This document shows, one piece after another, positions 42,391-64,000 of a DNA stretch of 64,000 nt. The stretch lies in assembly GCA_000388065.2 (NCBI GenBank), contig KB932203.1; one strand, given 5' to 3'. The notes beneath the pieces were generated by a model, which saw only the letters and a program-made list of their open reading frames with translations, did no database searches and was not told where the DNA came from. The position numbers and the translations under genes were made by a program. Numbering within the stretch: position 1 is the stretch's first letter; the number at the start of each line of letters is the position of its first letter. The stretch comes from Fonticula alba ATCC 38817. Its lineage: Eukaryota > Protista > Nucleariida.

Positions 42391-42969
42391 GGCCCGAGAG
42401 AAGGGCCTCCGGGGTGGGCCCTGGCCCGGGGCGGCCCGGGCAGGACCGGCAGAACCCCAGCCGCAGGCAATCAACAAGCCTCCCCTGTCCACCCGGGCGC
42501 GCCTGCGCCGGTGCCTGTCTCCCCGACCTGCCCCGGCCCGGGGGCTGCCCCTTCCTGCTCTCGGTCGGCCAAATGCAAGCAAAAGAGCAACCCCAAATCC
42601 GGCCACTTTCTCAGAAGTCTATATTCGTTTTTTCCATAATTGTGGCCTCCNNNNNNNNNNNNNNNNNNNNNNNNNNNNNNNNNNNNNNNNNNNNNNNNNN
42701 NNNNNNNNNNGGGGGGGGGGGGGGGGGGGGGGGGGCGGCGAGAGGGAGGGAGAAGGGAGGCGATCGCCAGGGATCCCTCCCTGGCGGTCTGTCTAGTATG
42801 TGCCCCGTGCCCTCTTGGGCGGCTGCGCCGGCCGTCTTGCCTGGCCTCCGCACTCTTGCTCATCTCTGCTGTCCTGCCTCTCGCTCTCTCTCGCCCTCCC
42901 TCGTGGCACTTTCGCGCACTGGCGAGAGAAAAGAACCCAGAGGGAGGGGGACGGAGAGGCACTCATGTC

Positions 42970-45900
42970 TCAAGAGCGCTTGGCCACGCGAACGTGCAGC
43001 ACCAGCATCACCTGCGTACCGAGGAGCTTCTCGATACGAGCCGAGGCATTTTGCACCATGGCGCGGTGGATGGTGCCATTCCGGCCGACGATTTTGGCCC
43101 GGTGGGCTTCGCGCGGGACCGTCAGCACATGGTCAATGCGCAGGAATCCCTTGAGCGGGGTCCAGCCGACGGTGGCCTGCTGCGCTTCCCAGGGGATCTC
43201 CTCATGGGTGTACTCCAGGAGCTGCTGGCGGATGATCTCATTGATGCGGGTCTCGATGCTCAGATCGGTCGAGGCGTCCGCGCTATATTCCCACGGGCCG
43301 GGCCGGGCACGCTTCATGAGGAACCTCTGCACGTACGACGAGCATGCACACGCGTGTGTGTGTGTGTGTGTGTGTGTGAGTGTGGGCGATCGAAGAGAAA
43401 GCAAAGGAGAAAAGAAGAAAGAGCAGCCCCAAGTTGCAATCAGCCAGCCAACCAGCCAGCCAACCAGCCAGCCAGCCAGAAAAGAAACAGGGCACAGGCA
43501 GAGGGGGGCACACACGCACCACCAACGGGTCCAGGCCACGCTGCTTGGCCGCCGAGATCATGAAGAACCCGTGCAAATTCAGGTCCTCACTCAGGTTGAC
43601 GTTCAGCTGGCCACGCAGCATGTCGGCCACGCGCGGGTCCGAATGGAGCGGCGCCTCCGGCCGGTCGATCCGGTGCAAAGGCGACCTCTCCAGCATGACC
43701 AGGCGCAGGTCCGACCGCTCGTGGGCGTCCCACTCGTCGGACTTCAGCGGCTCAATGCCCTGCTTCTCCAGCGTCTCATTGGACAGACGCTCGGCCATGC
43801 GCTCCAACTCGTTGAGCTCCGCCTCATCGGAGTCCTCGGCGTCGGAGGCCGCATCGCCAGGGGCGGCTGCCGCGGCCGCCAGCGACTTCAGGGCCTCTTC
43901 CTGGTCGAAGTCCAGGGAATTCAGCAAATCCTGCAGCGACTGGCCCCCCGGGGCATCCAGCAACTCCACCTGCTCGGCCATGCTGACCAGCAGCCGTGGA
44001 TCCGGGTACATGACCTCCGGCAGGCGCTGCCGCAGGAAGGCCCGATTGGCCCGGCGTACGGCCGGCGTGGCATCCGGATCGAAGTACTCCTCGTCGGAGT
44101 CCAGGCCATCCGACAGGTCGCTCTCCTCGTCGTCCTCCTCCTCCGGCTCCTTGTCGGAGTCGGAGTCGCTGGACCGCCCGCCGGCCTCCAGGTCGTCGAA
44201 CAGCTGCGCGGCCTCGAGCTCCGCACGCTCATCCGCCCGCATCAGCGCCTCGAAGGCCGGCAGCCCGACAAGCAGATCCGGCTCCGGCACAAAGTACGGC
44301 GACAGGTAGGGCTCCGGCACATTGGCCAGGTGCATGGTCGCCTCGGGTGTGGCGGTCGAATCGAGCCGCACCAGGGCCCAGTGCCGGTTGAGGGCCACGC
44401 GGAAGTAGTTCACCAGAATGGCCCGCAAGTACTGGCGGAAGGTCGAGCACCGGGGGTTGTTCGGCTGCAGGAAGTCCACCACATCGATGTCATCCTGCAG
44501 CTCCAGGCGCTGGATCTCCAGCAGGATCTGGTCCAGCAGGGCCAATTCCTCCGGCACCGAGGGATCCAGGCGCAGGTACTCCAGCTGTGCGGGCGAGGCC
44601 TCGCGCAGGAAGCGCCGCAGCCCGGCCGCCGTGCTGGCGCACAGGAGTTCCGGCCGCGGCTGGAACTGGTTGTCCGGACACATCAGGGCATTCAGCAGGG
44701 CCAGCGACCCGAAGAGCGGCGGGTTGGCCGGCTGCTGAGTCAGGTATTCCGTCGGCAGGAGCCGGGCCACGAAGGCCGGCAGGTCGCTCGGGACCAGGTC
44801 ATCCTGGGGGAAGTCCCGCCAGTTTTGGTGCAGGAGCTCCGTGCGCCGGCGCGCATCGGCCACCGAGGGGAAGGGCCCGAAGACGCGGTTGAGCTCCTCG
44901 GCCGACAGCTCGGACAGCGGCCGCGTGGGGTCGAGGGGGTCCGACTCGCCGGACCCCAGCGGCGGCGCCGGCGGCGGAGGCGCGTGCGGCGTCTTCAGGT
45001 CAAAGCTCTTGGGCCGGATATTGGCGAAGATCGAGCCATAGAACTCGGCCAGACTGCTCATGTCCTTGTTGGAGGAGGCGATATCGGTCTGTGGCGGGGG
45101 GGGGTCGGGGGCGGGGGGAGGGGAGGCGTGAGTACAGGGGCACCCACAGGAGGGCCATGGGCAGAGGTGTCAGCAGAGGAGGCGATGCCGTGAGGCCGGC
45201 CCGGTGGGTGTGCACCTTGTTGAAGACGATGAGCTTTTCCACATTGGAGGGATGCGCGGCCAGACGCTTGGCGATGTCCACGTCATTGGTCTGGTGGCTC
45301 TTGGAACAGTCGATCATCAGTACAACCAGATCCACGTCATCCAAGACCTTCCAGGCCTTCTCGATAGTAGGAAGGTTGCTCCTACAATGAGAGTCAAGAG
45401 TGGGCGAGCGGGTGGGCCGGCGGGAGGGTGAGCGGGGGNNNNNNNNNNNNNNNNNNNNNNNNNNNNNNNNNNNNNNNNNNNNNNNNNNNNNNNNNNNNNN
45501 NNNNNNNNNNNNNNGGGGGGGGGGGAAGGGGAGGAAAGAGGGGGGCGAAGGGAAGGCAAAAAGAGGGCCAAGGGCAGGAGGATGGGAGCGCTCTCAAATA
45601 AGGACCACCGGCAAAAGGGAGTGCAGCAACAACAAACAACGAGTACGGAACAGGAGAGAGGGAGGAAGAGGGAGGAGGAGGGAGGAGGAGGGAGGAAGGG
45701 AGAGAGAGAGAGAGAGAGAGAGAGAGCAAACGCACTTGCGCGCAACCTTGGTCGACAGAATGCCCGGGGTGTCGACGAAAACGATCTGCACATTCTCGCG
45801 CGTCAGGATGCCGAGGGTGTTGGTGCGCGTGGTGTTGGCCTTGCGCGAGGAAATGGACACCTCGCCACCGATCAGGGCATTCAGCAGGGTGGACTTGCCG

Positions 45901-46862
45901 GAGTTCGGCGTGCCGATGATGGCCACGCGGATGACCCGCGGCTCCTTCACCTGGGAGGCGGCCTTCTCCCGGGCCTCGGTGGTGGCCTGGTACTGGAGGT
46001 TCACCTGCTCCGCGTCGAAGTCCTTCAGCGGGTGCTTGATCGGGTCGGTCTGGGTCAGGCGCGTCAGCTGGGCCCAGTCCTCGTTCTCCGAGTCGGTGCC
46101 AGCCACGAAGTCCTCCTCGGCGGCGGCGGCGGCGGCCGCGTCGGCCGGGGCGGTGCCGGCGACCGCCGCGGCCTTGGCACCCGTCGAGAGGAGGTGCTCC
46201 GTCGGCGACACGGGCCCCAGCCGCGGGCTGGTCACCTCCAGTGGCAGGGGGTCAATCGAGATGGCCGAGTCGCGGAGCTGGAACTCCGGGTCATAGAGCA
46301 GCGTCGAGGAGTTGGCCACGGAGCGGCTCAGGCGCGGGATGTAGCCCTTGGCCGGGGTGGGCTGGGTGCGCTCGGGCAGCGGGTACTCCGACAGCCGACC
46401 TGGCGTGCCAGGGCCGCCCAGGGCGCCTGGCGCGCCGGCCTGCAGCGACCGGAGCAGACGTTCATTGTGCGACAGCGGCCGATCGGGCAGCGGCTCCGGC
46501 GCCACGAAAGACGCGAACTCCTGCCCGGCCCCGGCGAGAGCCTGCGGCCGGGGCAGGACCGGCATGCTTGGCGGGGGGGACGCCGGCATGCCTGGCGGGG
46601 GGGACGCCGGCAGGCCTGGCGAGGGGGGTGCCGGGGCTGGCGGGGTGGCCGCAGGCGCCGGGGCACTGGCCGGGGTGCCGGCGCCCTGGGCCAGGCGCAG
46701 CTGGTCCAGCATCTGGGCCCGGCGATTGACCGAGTAGTGTCGGCGCGGGGCCGGGCGCTCTAGCAGGACATCCAACAGCGGAATGGCCGGCGCCCGGGGG
46801 CCCGAGCCGTGGCCTGGCAGCAGGTGGCCCGGCACCCGGCGAACCAATGACCAGCGGAGCAT
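42970..46862 (-). CDS. ERAL1: GTPase Era, mitochondrial (ERAL1-like), ~1072 aa with a very large G4-G5 insertion
   Basis: Exons 46862-45736, 45381-45216, 45088-43520, 43326-42970 join in frame (3219 nt). G1 [10 protein letters not shown]2 KANTTR, G3 DTPG, G4 FNK|TD and G5 FFMISA. After these come GPWEY and a type II KH domain ([30 protein letters not shown]). Confidence 0.94.
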
Positions 46863-47673
46863 TGCGCGCGCGTGTGTGTTTGTCTGTGTGTCTGGCTGTG
46901 TGCGTGTGCGTGTGCGTGTGCGTGTGTGTGTGTGTCTTGGCGTGGGCAGATCCGCTCCGCTCGCGTGGTTTTACGGTCCGGCACGCTGCTCGAGGCTCTT
47001 TCTCTTCCCCTGCCTACGTGGAGATTTCACCTGACTGAGGCGAGGGCGTGGGGCGCGGTACAGCAGGCGCCGAAGGAAGTGGGCGGAGAGAGGGTGGGGG
47101 GGGGGGGAGAGGAAGGGGAGCCGTGCGGTGCTTGAAACGCTCTTGATAAACCAGCGGCAGATCCCTCGTGCACGGGGCAGCCAATGCAGAGACCCGGGAG
47201 AAGGGAGGGGCGGAGGTGGCGATGGGCCTGTGACAAGGCCGCGAGAGTGCGAGGGTAGAGGGGCGCAGGAGATATGGATGTGCAAAGGAGAGGGGGAGGG
47301 AGGGGGAGAGAGAGAAGGGGGATACCCGGTTCCCGGCATGCTCCAGGCAGCCCTCGCCAGGACCGTTGAAAAATGTATGTCCCCCCCCTCGGATCAGGCA
47401 CATGCCGAACGAGGAAGCAGGGGACAAGAGGCGGGCCCGGGCCCCGGCGACGATGGCGATACATGGCATGGCCCGGGGACCACGCTCGGGGCCACGCCGC
47501 CGGTCCGTGGGTTGGCAGCTCATTGGGAGTTATCATGTGTGTGTATTGTCATGCAGGGGGAGGTCAGCCGGCGCAGGGGGCGGGGGGGGGGGGGCGGAGA
47601 CCGACACCGGCCGGCGAACAGCTGGCCTCTCGGCCCGGCCCGCCATCCCCCCCCCTTTCCCTGCCAGCCGGCT

Positions 47674-56441: not shown

Positions 56442-59400
56442 CTAGGCCAGGGACGGGCCGCCGAAGCTCTCCTCGAACAGGCGCTGCGAGAGACGCATGT
56501 ACTTCTCGACCTCCTGAAAGACCACCGCCAAGAGAGGACCCGAAGAAGTGGCGGCACCAGCGCGCATGTGCGACCGGAAGTGGCAAGGCCCCCCCGGGGG
56601 ACGAGAGTGTCAGTCACGGAGGGGCGAGGGCAGGGGAAAAGAAAAAGGCACGAGGACAAAGGGGGGGGGGGGGAATGGCACGAACCGCTGGCTCCGAATC
56701 ACTGAGCGGCACGAAGCGCTCCTTGGTGCCGGACGGGTAGGCCGACAGGGGCGAGGTGGCCGCGGCCGGGCTGGCATCCGGCACACCGGACAACGAGGAC
56801 GCCGGCGGCGGGATGGCCGACCGGCTGGTGGTCGACGACCGCGACGACCGCCGGAACAGCCCGCCGTCGGAGGCCGACGTGGAGGCGGCCGCGGGGGCGG
56901 CCGACTCGGCGTGGATGTGCACCGAGCTGGCCGACGGGGTGACCGCGGCCGAGCGCTTGCCGGTGGCCACGCTGGAAACCACATTGGCCAGCGAGGTGGG
57001 CACATAGTAGATCATCAGGCCGCTCTGGTGCAGGAAGGACCCGGCATCGCGCCGCGCCGGGGAGCCGAGCATCGGCGCCGGGCTGGCAGGGGCCGAGGCC
57101 GCCGCGACCGCCGCCCCGGCGCCCTGCTTCGGCGGGGCCACCAGCACCCAGTCGACCAGGCGATCGAAGGTGACAAACCACTTGACCGAGGGCCCGCGCG
57201 CGTCCACATACAGGATGCCCTGGCGCGCGAAGTACAGGCTGGCCGACTCGCGGCGGATGTCCAGATGGTTGATGTAGTCCCAGGTGAAGAACTGCGANNN
57301 NNNNNNNNNNNNNNNNNNNNNNNNNNNNNNNNNNNNNNNNNNNNNNNNNNNNNNNNNNNNNNNNNNNNNNNNNNNNNNNNNNNNNNNNNNNNNNNNNNNN
57401 NNNNNNNNNNNNNNNNNNNNNNNNAAGGCGCCAGGACGGCAGCGACAGCATCAGATAAGCATGCTCCTTGGGCATATGGCGGGCGGGCCGAGGGGGAGGA
57501 AAAAGAAAAGAAGAAGAAAGAACGCACCTGGCCCTCATCGATGGTGGTCAGCAGGTGATTGCCGAAGGAATGGTGGGGGTAGTACGGCCGGAGGATGCGG
57601 TCCGGGCCGATGTAGCGCGGGATGCGAACATGCTCCGCCACGACGACCGAGCCGCTGACATCATTGCGGATGCCACTGGCGACTGCGGGCCCGCGGAGAA
57701 CGGAAAAGAGGAAGAAGACAGCCGCATCGGGAGGCCGGCCGCCACACAGGGCAAGGGAATAGCACAAAGCACCGAAAATAAAAAAAAAAAGAGGTCAGAC
57801 ATCAGGCACAGAGACAGAAACGGAGAGAGGGCGAGCAAAGGAAGCGGCGGCGGGACAAAGGCGACGCGAAAGAAACACCCCAAGGGCAGGGCACGACGCA
57901 CTGATGGCCGCGCCATCCAGCAGGCCAACCACCGGCTTGGTCACGGCGCCGGCCACGCCCTTGCCCACGCCGGAGAGGAAGCCCTTGAGGCCCTCCTCCT
58001 TGGCCCCATCCAGGGGCTTGGTCACCACCCCGGTCAGGGCGCTGCCGAGCCCACGCGCGAAGGTGGTCAGCCCGGTGCGCGTGGACTTGACGGTGCCCTG
58101 GCTGCGGGCGGCGATGCGCGTCACCTCGCGATCCTGCTGGAAGCGACTGTCGAAGGTCACCTCGGCCACGCCCTTGCTCAGGGAGCTGGTGATCTTGGTG
58201 GCGCTGTCCAGCACGCCGGACCCGGTGGACCGGAGCAGGGACGAAGTGCCGGCCGCCGCGCCCAGCAGGAACTCCTTCGACCCGCGGGTCAGGCCCTGGG
58301 CCGGCTCATAGAAGAAGTCCTGCACACCGGAGGACAGGCTGTTGAAGAGGCCCACCGGGTTGCCGAGCATGTCAATCGACCCGACCAGCATCAGCAACTG
58401 GCGCATCACCTGCGTGGCATAGTGCCGGGTCACCAGCGACACAAAGAGGCTGTCGGCCGCCGCGAAGTTCGACACCTCCAGCGAATTCAGCCGGATCGGC
58501 GCCCGGTCAATGCTCCCGAGGGACATGGACAGCAGGTCCACCACCGAGCTCAGGAACCCGAAGACCAGGGCGCCCTGCATGACCGACCGCTGGGGAGCAT
58601 CATCGGCCGCCGGGACAATGGCATCCCCGGCGCCGGCACCCGTGGAGCCGATGCCGCCATCGGGGCCGCCCTCGCCGCCGCCGGCGGCCGAGCCACCGGC
58701 CCCGCCCTCGGCCGCACCCTCGGCCAAGCCGTCCGGATTCCGGGACCGCATGAGCGTCAGGTTGATCTGGATCGGCTGGATCTCGAACACCCCGAAGTAG
58801 AGCCGCGTCGAGGCCGACCGGTGAACCGTCTGCGGCCGGGGCAGGCGCGGATCCACCGGACCGAAGGCGCCATGCAGGGTGGCCAGGCCGGGCTCCTCCA
58901 GAGCCGGCGGCCGGATCGCGGCCCCGGTCGGCAGCACCGCAAAGTGCCCCTCCTCCGGCTGCGGGCCGCCGCCCGGGCGAGGGCCCGGCACCGGCGCGCC
59001 CACCTGCAGCCGAGCAGAGGAACTCCCACTCGAGGGAAGCACACTGAAAACGAAGTCCAACATGCGCATCAGGAACACCTCGCTGCAATTGAGCTCGCAC
59101 TCCTGCAGCAGGACACTCAGGGACTTGGCCACGAAGACATGCGCCTCGGGTTGCTTGACAATCAGCGTCGACAGGTAGAGCAGGGGCTTGGCGGAGGACG
59201 CGTCGCCGGCCGTGATGACGGCCCCGGGCTCGGCCTCGGCCACCGACCCGGCCGATGACCCGGAATCACCGGCACGCTGCTTGGTGATGGTCGAGTGGAA
59301 GACCACCGGGAAGAGGGACCCGCGACTGGTGTCATCGATTTGCATCTGGCCAACGGTCAGGTCGATGGCCTGCGACAGGGAGGAGTCCGAGAACTGCAGC

Positions 59401-59845
59401 TTCAGGTCCTGCACCGTCAGGTACATGATCTCCCGCGGCACGGCATTGACAATGCTCAGGCCGATGCCCTTGAGGTTGACGGCCAGGTTGAAGGAGAAGG
59501 CAGAGCTGAGGGAGGCCAACTCGGTGTCCTCGTCCGAACCGTCGGCCCCGCCGGCCGAGGGGGGCTGTGCCAGCGAATCCGACGAGCCGGTCCGGGCGAG
59601 ATCGCCCGCATCCGGGGTCGTCGGAGACGTGGCCTCGGGCGTCGTACCGGCGGCCCAGCCGTGCAGGCGCTTGATGAGCACCCCGCGCGGGCGGAGGGCC
59701 GCAATCGGGGCCATGATCTTGGCCCGCGCCGGCCGGACGTCACTGCAAGGGGAGAAGGTGATCGGGCGGGCGGGCGGGCGGGCGGGCGGGAGGGAGGTGT
59801 GCCAGACACAGGCAAATACACCCGGGGGGGGAGGGGGGAAAAAAC

Positions 59846-59876
<31 letters not shown>

Positions 59877-62800
59877 GGCGAAGGAGGAACATGTCAGTAC
59901 ACGCCGGCACAAGGGGAAGGCAGCAGACAGCCATGTCGCCGCCGGGGCCATTGGAGCGTGGAGAGGGCGACCCACAGCCACAGGCACGCACTGATCACGG
60001 ATGGTCACCACGGTGGCCGTGGACTTGATGTCCACGGTGACCAGGACATAGCGCCGCGTCTGGGCCCCGGACTCGCGACTGGTCACCGTGATGGGAACCG
60101 GCTTGCGCCGGCCGATGACACGCAAATCCAACGGCAGCGACGCCGGCGGGATGGCGCACTCCGGCGAGTACATGGTCGAGCGCAGGGCATTCACCGCGTC
60201 GCCGGCATACAGCTTGACCAGGCGCTTCTCCGACAGCGGGGTGTCCCACAGGAAGGGAACCACCTGCGAGGCCGCGGCGAAGTAGTGCCCGGCCACGGGG
60301 TTGCTGTCGGTCAGGTAGCTCTCCATGCGGTAGCCGGTGTCCGGCTCGGCGGCCACCCCGGTGGCCGAGGCGCACTCCCCCTGCACCAGGGCCATGTGGT
60401 ACGAGGAGAGATTCACCAAACGGAAGGGGGCCTCACTGCGGAAGGGGAACACCCGCACAAAGAGAACCGCCCCTTCGAGGGACACGTCCACCCGCACAAC
60501 CGACACCTGCCCCTGCGGCGAGAAGATCCGCACGAAGGACTCGCCGACATTGTTGGCCGAGAAGCCGGCCGACCAGCGCCGGAATCCGTCCATCAGCTCG
60601 ATCGACTGGCGCAGGGACAGGTTCAGGTCCTGGCCCTGCTGGAAGTGGAAGGCCGACGACTTGCCCGGGAGGATGGTGGTGATGCCCTCGTCCTGCTGCG
60701 GAGGCGCGCGGCATGCCATGGCCGTCGCACGTCCAAAGCCAAGGGGGCACCGGCCAGGGCAGGGCGAGGCGAGATGGCGAGGAAGGGGGGGGGGAAAAGC
60801 ACCAGCCAGTCAGAGGGGGCCCCCGGAAGGGAAGGGAAAGGAGAGCGGCAGGCAGAACAGCGGGACAAAGCACGGTCGAGACCCGGGGAAAGGGGCCAGC
60901 CAAAAGCACAAGCAGGGGCAAGGGGGCGGGGNNNNNNNNNNNNNNNNNNNNNNNNNNNNNNGGGGGGGGGGGGGGCACAAGGGAGGGGACGTACGGTCGA
61001 ACGGCCGGCCGAGGGGGCAGTCGTCGACTTCCGCAGGAAGGTCGACTTGCCCGTGCCCGCCTCGAAGTGGCGGAAGTCCAGCGACACATTGGTGTGGTTG
61101 ACCAGGATGTAACGCGGCTTGAGGGTGATCACCTTGACCGACCGCAGTGAGGCGGCCACCTGCTGGTCGAGGGTGGACTCGGCCCCGGCCCCGGCCAGGC
61201 GGATCTCGCTGGCCAGCTGCCAGGCCTTGGTGGACTTGCCAGCCCCGAGCAGGGTGACTTCGCCCTCGGACCCGACGGCCGCCGTGTTGAAGGGCTGGAT
61301 GTGGCGGGGTCACGGAGGACAGGCGGTTAGTCATCGAACCCGGTGCCCAAGGAGCCGGGCCATGCCGGGGGGGGGGGGATCCCATGCGCAGGGCATTCGC
61401 GTCCCCTGCAAAAGGGGGAAAAAAAAAAGACGAAAAAAGGGCAGGAGCATAACCAACGCACGCTGGACCACTGGGACTCGTGCACCCGCAGCGACGTCAG
61501 GGACTTCATGCTGCTGGTGACGTAGAGCGTCATCGGGCAGGATTGCGACCCGTCGACGCTGTTGAAGGTAGACAGCATCGTGAGGGCCGTGTCCTCCAGA
61601 GGGGTGGCATCACCGACGCCGATGGTGCTGGCGCTCATGCGGTTGGCATTGCGCACTTGCAGATCGAGGCCCGTCTTGTTGACGATGAGATACGGCGAGA
61701 AGATGGTCAGCGCCCGGGGCAGAGGATGCGACCCGGGGCCGGACACCAGCCGCCGGTGGGCCACCCGCAGCCCCAGCGGGTCCGGGCAGTTGTCCGTGAA
61801 CAGGTCGATGGTCCCCTCGCCGGCGCCGGCCCCCATGGAGGGGTCCAGGATGCGCAGGGCCTCACGCGAGCAGAAGGTGGCCGCCGGGCTGCGCCGATGC
61901 GACCCCAGCTGCGGCAGCGACAGCCCCATGTACACCCGCCCGGTCACCGGCACATCGAACACCTCGCACCGGCTGCACGGGTCCAGGGTCCGAGAGAAGC
62001 CATTGACACTGTCGAAGGCCCGACGCTCGGTCTCCAGGCCGAAGGCCACCGGCGTCGGCAGGACATTCTCCAACACCAGCGGCGCAAACAGCCGCAGGTT
62101 CACCCGGCGCCCGGCGCCGGAGGAAGCAAAGCAGGCAGCCAGATGGAACACCGAGCGCGACCCATTGACCGGGTTGCACTCGAGCACGCCCCCGGACCAG
62201 GACGGCGCCCTCAGCAATTGCCCCGGCACCCCGGACAGGTCCAGCGCCTGGCAGAAGTCGAAGACATCGGAGATGGCCGATCCGGACCCGAGGGACACCG
62301 AATGCGGCACCGGCCGCACCGCCAGGGCCCCATGCGGGAAGCAGGTCACCGGCAGGGCCAGCGTCCCGCCATGCGGCTGGACAACATGCCCGGCTGGCGG
62401 ACCCCCGGCCGACCCGGCATCGGCCTTGGCCCCGGCCGGCAGGAAGACCACCTCCAGCGGCACGCTGGTGGCATTTTCCAACACCAGCGGCGACCGGAAA
62501 TGCACCACCTTCAGGCCATCCACCACATTGATGTCCACCACCATGGGCACCCGGCGGAAGGTGGCCCCAGACCCGGACCCGGCCGTGCCGCCGGCGAGCC
62601 CACCAACACCGGCCACCACGGTGGAAGCCAGATGCGTCAGCCCGGCCAGCGGGGCGGCCCGAGTGGACCCGCGCGTCGGGGTCGACGGCGACTCGGCCAC
62701 CGGCGAAGCGGCCACCGAGCCCGAGGAATCGCCAACCGCCTGGCGCAGGGCCAACAACCGCGAACCGACCGTGGCCATGGAGAAGGAGGAAGCCGGCAGC

Positions 62801-64000
62801 CCATCGGCCCCGGCCGCCAGGCTGACCGACAGGCGCGAGGCCGCCACGGCGCTGGTGGCCGCCGCGGCCGCGGCCGCCGTGGCACCCATGGCCGCTGGCC
62901 GCACACCGAAGGCCGCCGACGACAGGCGCGACCCGTCGCCAGGCAGGGCCAGCAGGCTGGGCGTGGCGGACACCGCCGCCGGCGCACCCTCCGCCATGTC
63001 CACCAGGGCCAGGTGCAAGTCCAGCCCGGTGCTGTTGATCACCTCGAAGGCCGAGGACCGGGCACCGGCCGACCGGGCCGCCACCAGCAGCGTATTGTCG
63101 GCGGACACCTGCCCGGACAGCTCCTGGAACAGGGTCCCGGCACGCAGGAGATCCTGCAGCAGGTCGTGCGTGACCGTGCACTCCAGCCGCCGCGGGGCCA
63201 GCAGCTCGATGCTGGTGGCCTGCCCGATGGACACCGACGCCGAGCAGGACCACTTCTCGATGACCGGCTCCCAGGCGGACCGGCGATTGTTGAAGTAGTT
63301 GACATAGAAGGACGGCGAGATGGACACCGCCATGGAGGTCACCTCGCCCAGGGACCCGGTCAGGTCCACGCTCAGCGGCAGGAAGCACACGTCGAAGAGC
63401 GGCGTGTTGGTCAGGCCCAGGTCATTGACCACGGTCAGGTGCAGCCCCTGCAGGTGCAGCGAAACCACCAGGGCCCGGGCTGCCGGATCCACGGCAGCGA
63501 GGCCCGGGGCATCGGCCGCCGCCGCCGCCGCCACGGCCTGGGACTCGGCCGCCGTGTGCGACAGGAGCTCCTGCTGCCGGGCCGCATCGGCCAGAACCAG
63601 GTGCCGGTCGATCTCCGTCGGCCGGAGGATGTCATGCGCGTCGACAATCTGGCAGCAGGAAGAGGGGGGGAGGGGGGAGGGGGGGACGAAGAGACGAACC
63701 AGGGAGGAGCCGAATGAAGGAGGAGCCCGGGAAAAAGAGTCAGACATGAGAGGGCACATGGCTCGCCAGGGGGAGGAGAGCGGCCGGCAGGGAGGCAGGC
63801 AGAGTCACGCACGGTGTCCGGCTTCGGGCGGCGAGCGTCGGCATTGAGGAACTGGCACCCGGTCAGGGTGCTGGCGATGTAGCCGCCGTAATTCGAGAGG
63901 ATAATCAAACCCGCCAGGTTGATGGAGATGTTGGTCGGCTGCAGGGTCAGCCCCACACCGATGGACGTCTCCTTGAGGGTGAGCCCCACGCGGCAGCTCA
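56442..64000 (-). CDS. VPS13: VPS13 family lipid-transfer protein, C-terminal part (5'-partial)
   Basis: Motifs NYFNNRRSAWEPVIE; VAB/SHR-binding repeats (FRSPLVLENAT, IFSPYLIVNKTG, PRYILVNHT); LKGIGLSIVN..EIMY; QIDD..FPVV; IQPIQINLT; LVGSIDMLGNPVGLF..GVQDFFYEP; the ATG_C helix GLTTFARGLGSALTGVVTKP..GFLSGVGKG; RIPRYI; a PH-like tail. The last exon EVEKYMRLSQRLFEESFGGPSLA ends at TAG 56442. Confidence 0.94.

What the first reader, a model, noticed from the sequence alone, without database searches (positions are those of the whole stretch)
43560..45088. ~500-aa insertion between G4 and G5 of mitochondrial Era
Seen: G4 (NK|TD) ends at the start of a 523-codon exon and G5 (FFMISA) lies at its end, with no stop and no microsatellite intron in between. 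The insert has structured-looking helical segments ([37 protein letters not shown]) and acidic tracts ([18 protein letters not shown]). Known: this gap is only tens of residues in bacterial Era and under ~100 in human ERAL1 as recalled; Era-KH binds the 3' end of small-subunit rRNA. Inference: an uncharacterised domain grafted into the GTPase, possibly an rRNA mimic or chaperone for mitoribosome assembly.
Basis: partly seen in the sequence, partly recalled or inferred. Interest (0 to 1): 0.7.

Follow-up and report, generated by a model that had tools for sequence, protein, structure and literature searches.

The report
Giant orphan insert in Fonticula Era
The amoeba Fonticula alba makes its mitochondrial ribosome-assembly GTPase (Era/ERAL1) with about 480 extra, very acidic residues in one surface loop of the GTPase domain; the insert is real and stays in the spliced mRNA, but it resembles nothing else known and is most likely a tolerated, species-specific expansion.

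Summary
A four-exon gene on the minus strand (46862..42970) encodes a 1072-aa Era/ERAL1 orthologue of Fonticula alba, already public as XP_009494314.1, a "hypothetical protein".

- **Splicing:** cDNA contigs show all three introns removed. Exon 3 (45088..43520, 523 codons) is covered in every bin with no internal joint.
- **Motif positions:** G4 (NK|TD) is split by intron 2. G5 (ISA) lies 10 codons before the end of exon 3.
- **Gap size:** 509 residues separate G4 from G5, against 69 in human ERAL1 and about 28 in bacterial Era.
- **Exact site:** helix alpha4 is kept. The roughly 479-aa insert (residues 451-929) sits in the alpha4-beta6 loop, which is also lengthened in human ERAL1.
- **Character:** the insert is complex sequence with pI 4.3, flanked by basic Era pieces (pI 9.3 and 10.0).
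- **Relatives:** an exhaustive HMMER search of 1.84 billion proteins, plus Pfam, NCBIfam, PDB, ESM Atlas and two metagenome scans, found only the protein itself. Two single-sequence AlphaFold models were unusable (pLDDT about 40).

My reading is a working Era with a lineage-specific appendage. Other notes of this scan report many such inserts in this genome. The "rRNA mimic/chaperone" idea is untested but not excluded. Interest is moderate to low.

The parts
45736..46862 (-). Exon 1 (residues 1-375 plus two bases of codon 376). It holds a presequence-like Arg-rich start and a ~300-aa Pro/Ala-rich N-terminal extension that includes a 24-nt x 3.2 tandem repeat at 46559-46634. It then carries G1 (GTPNSGKS, residue 317), G2 and G3 (DTPG, residue 364).
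   Evidence: A cDNA contig joins 45737 to 45381.
45382..45735 (-). Intron 1 (GT..AG, 354 nt as assembled). It contains an assembly gap of N and microsatellite-like CT/CCT tracts.
45216..45381 (-). Exon 2 (residues 376-431). It covers Era profile positions 74-120 and ends with the N-K of G4.
45089..45215 (-). Intron 2 (127 nt, phase 0). It splits the G4 motif as NK|TD.
   Evidence: The joint 45088|45216 appears in two cDNA contig sets.
43520..45088 (-). Exon 3 (523 codons, residues 432-954). In order it holds the T-D of G4, helix alpha4, the insert, then strand beta6 with G5.
45032..45082 (-). Residues 434-450. This stretch is still matched by the Era profiles (up to position 138 of 291), so it is the retained helix alpha4.
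   Evidence: The structural assignment rests on the Era/Ras fold (inference).
43595..45031 (-). The insert proper, residues 451-929 (479 aa). It matches no Era profile position. It has pI 4.34, with 93 D+E against 44 K+R.
44222..44941 (-). Insert part A, residues ~481-720. It is a non-repetitive, hydrophobic, helix-prone stretch. It scores as 'foldable' on the charge-hydropathy plot.
   Evidence: Helices are guessed, at low confidence.
44072..44221 (-). Insert part B, residues ~721-770. It is an Asp/Glu/Ser tract, scored as disordered, with net charge down to -15 per 30 residues.
43595..44071 (-). Insert part C, residues ~771-929. It mixes helix-prone and acidic/Ala-rich segments. One 42-residue stretch weakly resembles a consensus armadillo repeat.
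   Evidence: (E = 0.043, designed proteins only).
43520..43594 (-). Residues 930-954. This is strand beta6 and G5 (ISA at 942-944, DNA 43550-43558), aligned to human ERAL1 from residue 304 onward.
43327..43519 (-). Intron 3 (193 nt, GT..AG). It contains (CA)n and (GCTG)n microsatellites.
   Evidence: Joint 43326|43520.
42970..43326 (-). Exon 4 (residues 955-1072 plus the TGA stop). It holds the PGPWEY motif and the KH type-2 domain with VGRNG.

Best explanation
This is the Fonticula alba orthologue of the mitochondrial small-subunit assembly GTPase Era/ERAL1.

Its catalytic and RNA-binding parts are intact, so I infer that it does the usual job. The KH domain holds the 3' end of the mitochondrial small-subunit rRNA, and the GTPase domain acts as the release switch.

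The extra ~479 residues form a species-specific expansion of the alpha4-beta6 loop. In the Ras/Era fold this loop lies at the end of the sheet away from the nucleotide pocket, and it is already ~40 residues longer in human ERAL1 than in bacteria. A long appendage can therefore hang there without disturbing GTP binding.

I take the appendage to be a tolerated, fast-evolving, partly helical and partly disordered acidic segment. It looks like one case of a genome-wide tendency of this GC-rich amoeba to carry long inserts inside conserved domains, not a conserved functional domain.

Shown here: the gene model, the expression and splicing, the Era identity, the exact site of the insert, its acidity, and the absence of relatives. 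Inferred: mitochondrial location, retained Era function, and the passive nature of the insert.
For: Splicing and coverage of exon 3 in cDNA contigs.

The exon translations are identical to XP_009494314.1.

Era identity:
- TIGR00436 scores 149.8 bits against a cut-off of 116.25, in two stretches. The first runs to residue ~442-450.
- The best solved relative of each conserved piece is human ERAL1.
- G1-G5 and the KH GxxG motif are present.

Orphan status of the insert:
- phmmer against 1.84 billion representatives returned the protein itself only.
- The word search found nothing.
- Pfam and NCBIfam found nothing.
- The ESM Atlas gave no usable hit.
- JGI metagenome contigs held no relative.

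The same protein also has a ~200-aa longer Pro/Ala-rich N-terminal extension with a tandem repeat.

Leads from other notes of this scan, not tested here: long inserts in MedA, adenylyl cyclase, a GPCR loop, Rim15 and a cyclin, and a giant orphan tail on mitoribosomal mS29.
Against: About half of the insert (residues ~480-720 and 780-825) is complex, hydrophobic and helix-prone. It does not look like typical junk low-complexity sequence.

Its codon usage is as strongly biased as the rest of the gene.

The strong contrast between the acidic insert (pI 4.3) and the basic RNA-binding core (pI 9.3 and 10.0) would suit a functional electrostatic role.

The absence of relatives may only reflect the lack of any close sequenced relative of Fonticula.

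No test of selection was possible.

A second, normal-length Era gene elsewhere in the genome was not excluded.
Confidence: 0.6

Rival explanations
1. The insert is a functional acidic module. It might mimic nucleic acid and fold back on the basic KH/GTPase surfaces to gate binding of the rRNA 3' end. Alternatively it might dock or chaperone basic mitoribosomal proteins during small-subunit assembly. This is.
For: The insert has pI 4.34 and a net charge of about -49. It is flanked by Era pieces of pI 9.3 and 10.0. It contains hydrophobic helix-prone segments that could form a folded core. It is kept in frame and expressed. ERAL1 sits beside uS7m and blocks h23, bS21m and uS11m (PMC9892005), so an arm there could reach partners. 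An earlier scan note reports a giant orphan tail on mS29 in the same genome (lead only).
Against: No relative, family or confident fold was found. Acidic tracts are common in neutral expansions. Nothing ties the segment to RNA or to ribosomal proteins.
Confidence: 0.2
2. Much of the segment is removed after all, either by a rare or alternative internal splice or by proteolytic processing in mitochondria. The working protein would then be closer to normal size.
For: No single contig spans all of exon 3. The contigs listed leave 44532-44550 and 44745-44916 without a listed piece, although the depth there is above zero. Contigs cannot show rare isoforms. Six strong-looking GT donors exist inside the exon.
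Against: No internal joint was reported in either cDNA set, whereas all three real introns were found. Codon periodicity is uniform along the exon. Removing part of a loop by proteolysis would split the G domain into two chains.
Confidence: 0.08
3. The gene is an Era under relaxed constraint and on its way to loss, as happened in higher fungi. Or it is a diverged paralogue beside a normal Era elsewhere in the genome.
For: Era was lost in higher fungi, and Fonticula belongs to their sister lineage (PMC10582724). The protein scores below the stricter NF000908 cut-off (212.9 against 237). The N-terminus and the loop are both bloated.
Against: All G motifs, the PGPWEY motif and the KH GxxG motif are intact. 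The gene is transcribed and correctly spliced. TIGR00436 scores above its cut-off. The scan's notes on this genome list no other Era, which is weak evidence.
Confidence: 0.07

Closest known systems
Human ERAL1 (mitochondrial Era; PDB 8csp, 8csq, 9h52)
   Same: It is the best solved match of all three conserved pieces (E = 2.9e-14, 0.042 and 2.5e-15). Both share the PGPWEY motif after G5 and have an Era G domain followed by a KH type-2 domain. The same alpha4-beta6 loop is longer than in bacteria (69 residues between G4 and G5).
   Different: F. alba has 509 residues between G4 and G5, about 440 more than human. Its N-terminal region is about 200 aa longer (G1 at residue 317 against ~117). The insert shows no sequence similarity to the human loop.
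Bacterial Era (E. coli 1ega, Aquifex 3iev, Thermus 1wf3)
   Same: The domain order and motifs are the same. The TIGR00436 Era model scores above its cut-off.
   Different: Bacterial Era is about 300 aa long, with roughly 28 residues between G4 and G5. That figure is estimated from the alignment ranges. Bacterial Era has no presequence and no insert.
G' subdomain of EF-G/eEF2 (recalled from the literature, not tested here)
   Same: It is a precedent for a whole extra module placed between G4 and G5 of a translational GTPase without loss of GTPase function.
   Different: G' is about 90 aa, conserved across the family, folded, and has a known partner (L7/L12). The Fonticula insert is five times longer, is found in one species only, and has no known fold or partner.
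Long lineage-specific inserts inside conserved domains. Cases in Plasmodium and Dictyostelium proteins are recalled from memory. Cases in other F. alba genes come from this scan's notes.
   Same: The segments are in frame and expressed, have no homologues and a biased composition, and sit in surface loops of otherwise conserved proteins.
   Different: Much of this insert is not low-complexity sequence. Only two short codon-repeat tracts were found.

Membership tests
Era / ERAL1 GTPase family | P-loop G domain carrying G1 to G5 in the normal order | tested here: met
   G1 GTPNSGKS at residue 317, G2 TTR, G3 DTPG at 364, G4 NKTD at 430 and G5 ISA at 942. Pfam MMR_HSR1 scores 82.7 bits over residues 312-431.
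Era / ERAL1 GTPase family | C-terminal KH type-2 domain with a GxxG loop | tested here: met
   The Era profile NF000908 covers positions 163-277 on exon 4 at E = 1.8e-21. VGRNG is at residue 1034. Pfam KH_2 alone is below its cut-off (19.1 against 22 bits).
Era / ERAL1 GTPase family | Whole-protein score above the curated cut-off of an Era equivalog model | tested here: met
   TIGR00436 scores 149.8 bits against a cut-off of 116.25. The stricter NF000908 model scores 212.9 against 237 and is not reached.
Mitochondrial ERAL1 subfamily | Closer to ERAL1 than to bacterial or plastid Era | tested here: met
   Human ERAL1 is the top Era-family PDB hit for each conserved piece; for exon 2 two MnmE/TrmE chains score slightly better. 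For residues 900-1072 the E-value is 2.5e-15, against 1.5e-06 for the best bacterial Era. No phylogeny was made, because no other eukaryotic Era could be fetched.
Mitochondrial ERAL1 subfamily | Mitochondrial targeting, binding of the SSU rRNA 3' end, and a role in mt-SSU assembly | not testable with these tools
   The only support is an Arg-rich N-terminus free of acidic residues, read directly from the sequence. The function is inferred from orthology (PMC9892005, PMC10582724).
Armadillo/HEAT alpha-solenoid (considered for the insert) | Several tandem ~40-residue helical repeats detectable by a profile or by self-similarity | tested here: not met
   One 82-residue stretch hits designed consensus-ARM proteins at E = 0.043-0.1. 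There is no Pfam Arm/HEAT hit at E <= 10. Self-BLAST found no internal repeat. Residues 478-725 have no PDB hit.
Intein or other self-removing protein insert | A Hint/intein domain with its splice-junction residues | tested here: not met
   No Pfam or NCBIfam family matches exon 3.

The most novel reading that the evidence does not exclude
The acidic, partly helical insert is a working module of Fonticula mitoribosome assembly. It could be an intramolecular nucleic-acid mimic that gates the KH domain's grip on the rRNA 3' end, or an arm that recruits basic small-subunit proteins. It may have evolved together with the giant orphan extension reported on mS29 in the same genome. That would point to a remodelled mt-SSU assembly pathway in the sister lineage of fungi, shortly before fungi lost Era altogether.
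Probability: 0.12. Interest if true: 0.65.

Novelty: new variant of a known kind. Interest (0 to 1): 0.35.

Why it matters
Era is one of the most conserved ribosome-assembly GTPases, and its G domain is normally compact. An expressed Era with about 480 extra residues inside that domain shows how much the alpha4-beta6 loop can tolerate. It also marks a natural site for engineering tags or domains into Era/ERAL1.

Fonticula belongs to the lineage next to fungi, and higher fungi have lost Era. If the insert proved functional, it would be a rare view of how mitochondrial small-subunit assembly was rewired in that lineage.

If the insert is neutral, as I think more likely, it is a clear example of the insert-rich proteome of this GC-rich amoeba and not a finding about ribosome biology.

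Tried and rejected
Searches for relatives of the insert
- (1) Word-index search with exon 3, seeing candidates of 288-915 aa: nothing.
- (2) The same index with P0001 regions 955-1072 and 305-455, seeing candidates of 590-1876 aa: the protein itself only. In one search I set the threshold at 1e-10, which may have hidden weaker long Era-likes. Normal-length Era proteins were outside the length range. I therefore could not collect other eukaryotic ERAL1 sequences, build a phylogeny or survey loop length.
- (3) Exhaustive phmmer with exon 3: the protein itself only.
- (4) JGI metagenome contigs, with the insert and with the conserved C-terminal part: no relative.
- (5) ESM Atlas feature search on residues 480-730 and 765-935: no usable hit, and the Atlas holds no model.

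Structure
- (6) AlphaFold2 without an alignment, on exon 3 and on residues 478-725: pLDDT 39.5 and 39.8. I ran no fold search, because such models give meaningless matches.
- (7) PDB sequence search of the insert: only chance-level hits.

RNA evidence
- (8) RNA raw-read runs labelled organism B (X22, X23): 1 and 0 reads laid, so they are no test.
- (9) The loose ends of some cDNA contigs at 43852, 44169, 44617, 44790, 44961 and 45965 were searched for in the window and not found. I take them to be foreign or chimeric contigs that align only in part. This was not resolved.

Origin of the insert
- (10) A nested gene, an antisense gene or a retained intron is rejected by the splice joints, which link exon 3 to exons 2 and 4 on the minus strand.
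- (11) A microsatellite or transposon origin is rejected. Exon 3 holds only two short codon-repeat tracts, and the rest of the window holds no similar DNA or protein except two short chance-level hits.

Side test
- (12) I looked for split domains in other open frames of the window. Only VPS13 pieces turned up, so the test was uninformative.

Full report
WHAT IS THERE

The window is GC-rich eukaryotic DNA (65-75% GC around the finding). On the minus strand, four open pieces carry the parts of an Era GTPase in order.
- Exon 1 matches Era profile positions 4-64.
- Exon 2 matches positions 74-120.
- Exon 4 matches positions 163-277, including the KH domain.
- The 523-codon exon 3 between them matches no family at all.

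GENE MODEL AND EXPRESSION

Two contig sets of organism A (X7, X10) were flagged only as 'RNA?'. They behave as cDNA. They skip 43327-43519 and 45089-45215 with GT..AG ends on the minus strand. One contig joins exon 1 (to 45737), exon 2 (45381-45216) and exon 3 (from 45088). Another joins exon 3 (44066-43520) to exon 4. Depth over the introns is zero.

Every 132-base bin of exon 3 has depth in X7, and no joint inside the exon was reported. No single contig spans the whole exon, and contigs cannot exclude rare isoforms.

Exon 3 has the codon signature of the rest of the gene. GC at codon position 3 is 0.86-0.94 in every 50-codon block, and 0.30-0.54 at position 2. The open frame alone would prove little, because the antisense strand is open for 797 codons as well.

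IDENTITY

An exhaustive HMMER search with exon 3 returned exactly one protein out of 1.84 billion. It is P0001, 1072 aa, 100% identical over residues 432-954. P0001 is XP_009494314.1 / KCV71191.1, 'hypothetical protein H696_02143' of Fonticula alba.

Each of my exon translations is found exactly in P0001, at residues 1-375, 377-431, 432-954 and 955-1072. All full-length work used P0001.

P0001 passes the curated cut-off of the Era equivalog TIGR00436 (149.8 against 116.25 bits, in two stretches). It falls short of the stricter NF000908 model (212.9 against 237). Human mitochondrial ERAL1 is the best Era-family solved relative of each conserved piece, and overall best for exons 1 and 4. The ERAL1-type PGPWEY motif follows G5. 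The motifs lie at G1 317, G3 364, G4 430-433, G5 942-944 and KH VGRNG 1034.

WHERE EXACTLY THE INSERT SITS

The first Era-profile stretch runs on past G4 to residue ~442-450, which is profile position 138 of 291. Homology resumes at about residue 930-938. So helix alpha4 is kept, and the unmatched 479 residues (451-929) replace at most about ten profile positions in the alpha4-beta6 connection.

Human ERAL1 has NKVD at 236-239 and SA at 309-310, that is 69 residues between the motifs. The Perrault mutation N236I is described as a G4 mutation (PMC9892005), which agrees with this numbering. Bacterial Era has roughly 28 residues between the motifs, estimated from the alignment ranges. Fonticula has 509.

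The same loop is thus already the variable one in the mitochondrial subfamily. From the established Ras-like fold, G4 and G5 lie at the nucleotide end of strands beta5 and beta6. The alpha4-beta6 turn lies at the opposite end. That is why a large appendage there need not disturb GTP binding. This last step is inference.

WHAT THE INSERT IS LIKE

It is not a microsatellite product. Only a short acidic codon-repeat tract (44117-44168) and a poly-Pro tract (44959-44991) are repetitive. There is no internal protein repeat. The rest of the window holds no similar DNA or protein apart from two short chance-level DNA hits.

It is strongly acidic, with pI 4.34 and 93 D+E against 44 K+R. The flanking Era pieces are basic, with pI 9.3 and 10.0.

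A charge-hydropathy scan divides it as follows:
- residues ~481-720 are foldable and hydrophobic;
- residues ~721-795 are a disordered Asp/Glu/Ser tract;
- residues 781-825 are a short foldable stretch;
- residues 826-915 are acidic or Ala-rich and disordered.

Two AlphaFold2 runs without an alignment drew helices throughout, but at pLDDT 39.5 and 39.8. These are unusable, so no fold search was made.

The only sequence hint is a single stretch (exon-3 residues 376-457) that resembles the consensus armadillo repeat of designed proteins at E = 0.043. No Pfam hit or internal repeat backs it.

RELATIVES

None was found.
- Word-index searches found nothing, or only the protein itself.
- The exhaustive representative search found the protein itself only.
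- Pfam and NCBIfam found nothing.
- The PDB gave nothing significant.
- The ESM Atlas gave no usable hit.
- Two scans of JGI metagenome contigs found no relative.

The library includes EukProt (one search shows an EukProt accession). A recognisably similar segment in another protist in that library would probably have been seen. Fonticula has no close sequenced relative, however, so fast-evolving sequence could escape detection.

CONTEXT

In human mt-SSU intermediates, the ERAL1 KH domain binds the 12S rRNA 3' end flexibly. Its GTPase domain contacts uS7m. ERAL1 blocks docking of h23, bS21m and uS11m until it leaves (PMC9892005). Era was lost in higher fungi and is absent from S. cerevisiae (PMC10582724; PMC9892005). 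Fonticula lies in the sister lineage of fungi and keeps it.

Other notes of this scan on the same genome report long inserts inside conserved domains:
- MedA, with inserts of 425 and 110 aa;
- an adenylyl cyclase, with about 960 aa;
- a GPCR loop, with about 500 aa;
- the Rim15 receiver domain, with about 520 aa;
- a cyclin box, with about 300 aa;
- a ~2100-aa orphan tail on mitoribosomal mS29.

These are unchecked leads. The one thing I could see myself is that this same protein also has a bloated Pro/Ala-rich N-terminus with a 24-nt tandem repeat.

READING

Most likely (0.6): this is a working ERAL1 orthologue with a tolerated, lineage-specific appendage in a permissive loop.

Rivals:
- a functional acidic module, acting as an RNA mimic, an autoinhibitor or a docking arm for ribosomal proteins (0.2);
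- hidden removal of the segment by rare splicing or by proteolysis (0.08);
- relaxed constraint, or a diverged paralogue (0.07).

Its functional inference remains speculation.

NOVELTY

The gene model is public but unnamed. My literature searches found no description of an Era with a large intra-G-domain insert. I rate it a new variant of a known kind, of moderate to low interest unless the insert proves to be conserved or functional.

Noticed in passing
window 46559-46634 (minus-strand exon 1): A 24-nt unit repeated 3.2 times (90% matches) encodes PG(L/M)PASPP-type repeats. It lies in the ~300-aa Pro/Ala-rich N-terminal extension of the same Era protein. This is a second lineage-specific expansion in the gene.
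   Followed up: partly
window 45442-45513 (intron 1) and about 42650-42710 (downstream of the gene): Assembly gaps (runs of N) lie in intron 1 and just 3' of the gene. The true length of intron 1 is therefore unknown. The cDNA contig bridges the gap, so no exon is hidden there.
   Followed up: partly
window 42800-45193, plus strand: A 797-codon open frame runs antisense to the Era gene, and there are several other long overlapping frames. This is typical of stop-poor GC-rich coding DNA and is not a gene.
   Followed up: partly
window 43852, 44169, 44617, 44790, 44961, 45965: Some cDNA contigs align up to these points and then continue for ~255 letters of sequence that is not in the window. They are probably foreign or chimeric contigs aligning in part. 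Alternative transcripts were not excluded.
   Followed up: partly
window 57798-63804, minus strand: Two long open frames match the VPS13 middle region and the VPS13 adaptor-binding (VAB) domain. They are part of a VPS13-family lipid-transfer protein gene.
   Followed up: no
window 43354-43384, 43437-43479, 45652-45726, 46872-46940: The introns and the 5' flank of the gene are filled with microsatellites: (CA)n, (GCTG)n/(CAGC)n and (CT/CCT)n. The exons are nearly free of them.
   Followed up: no
runs X5, X6, X8, X9, X14-X19: Near-identical DNA of this locus occurs in soil, sediment, sludge and gut metagenome runs and in runs labelled 'organism B' (2025). Fonticula-like organisms, or this strain, are therefore present in environmental data and could supply variants for a selection test.
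   Followed up: no
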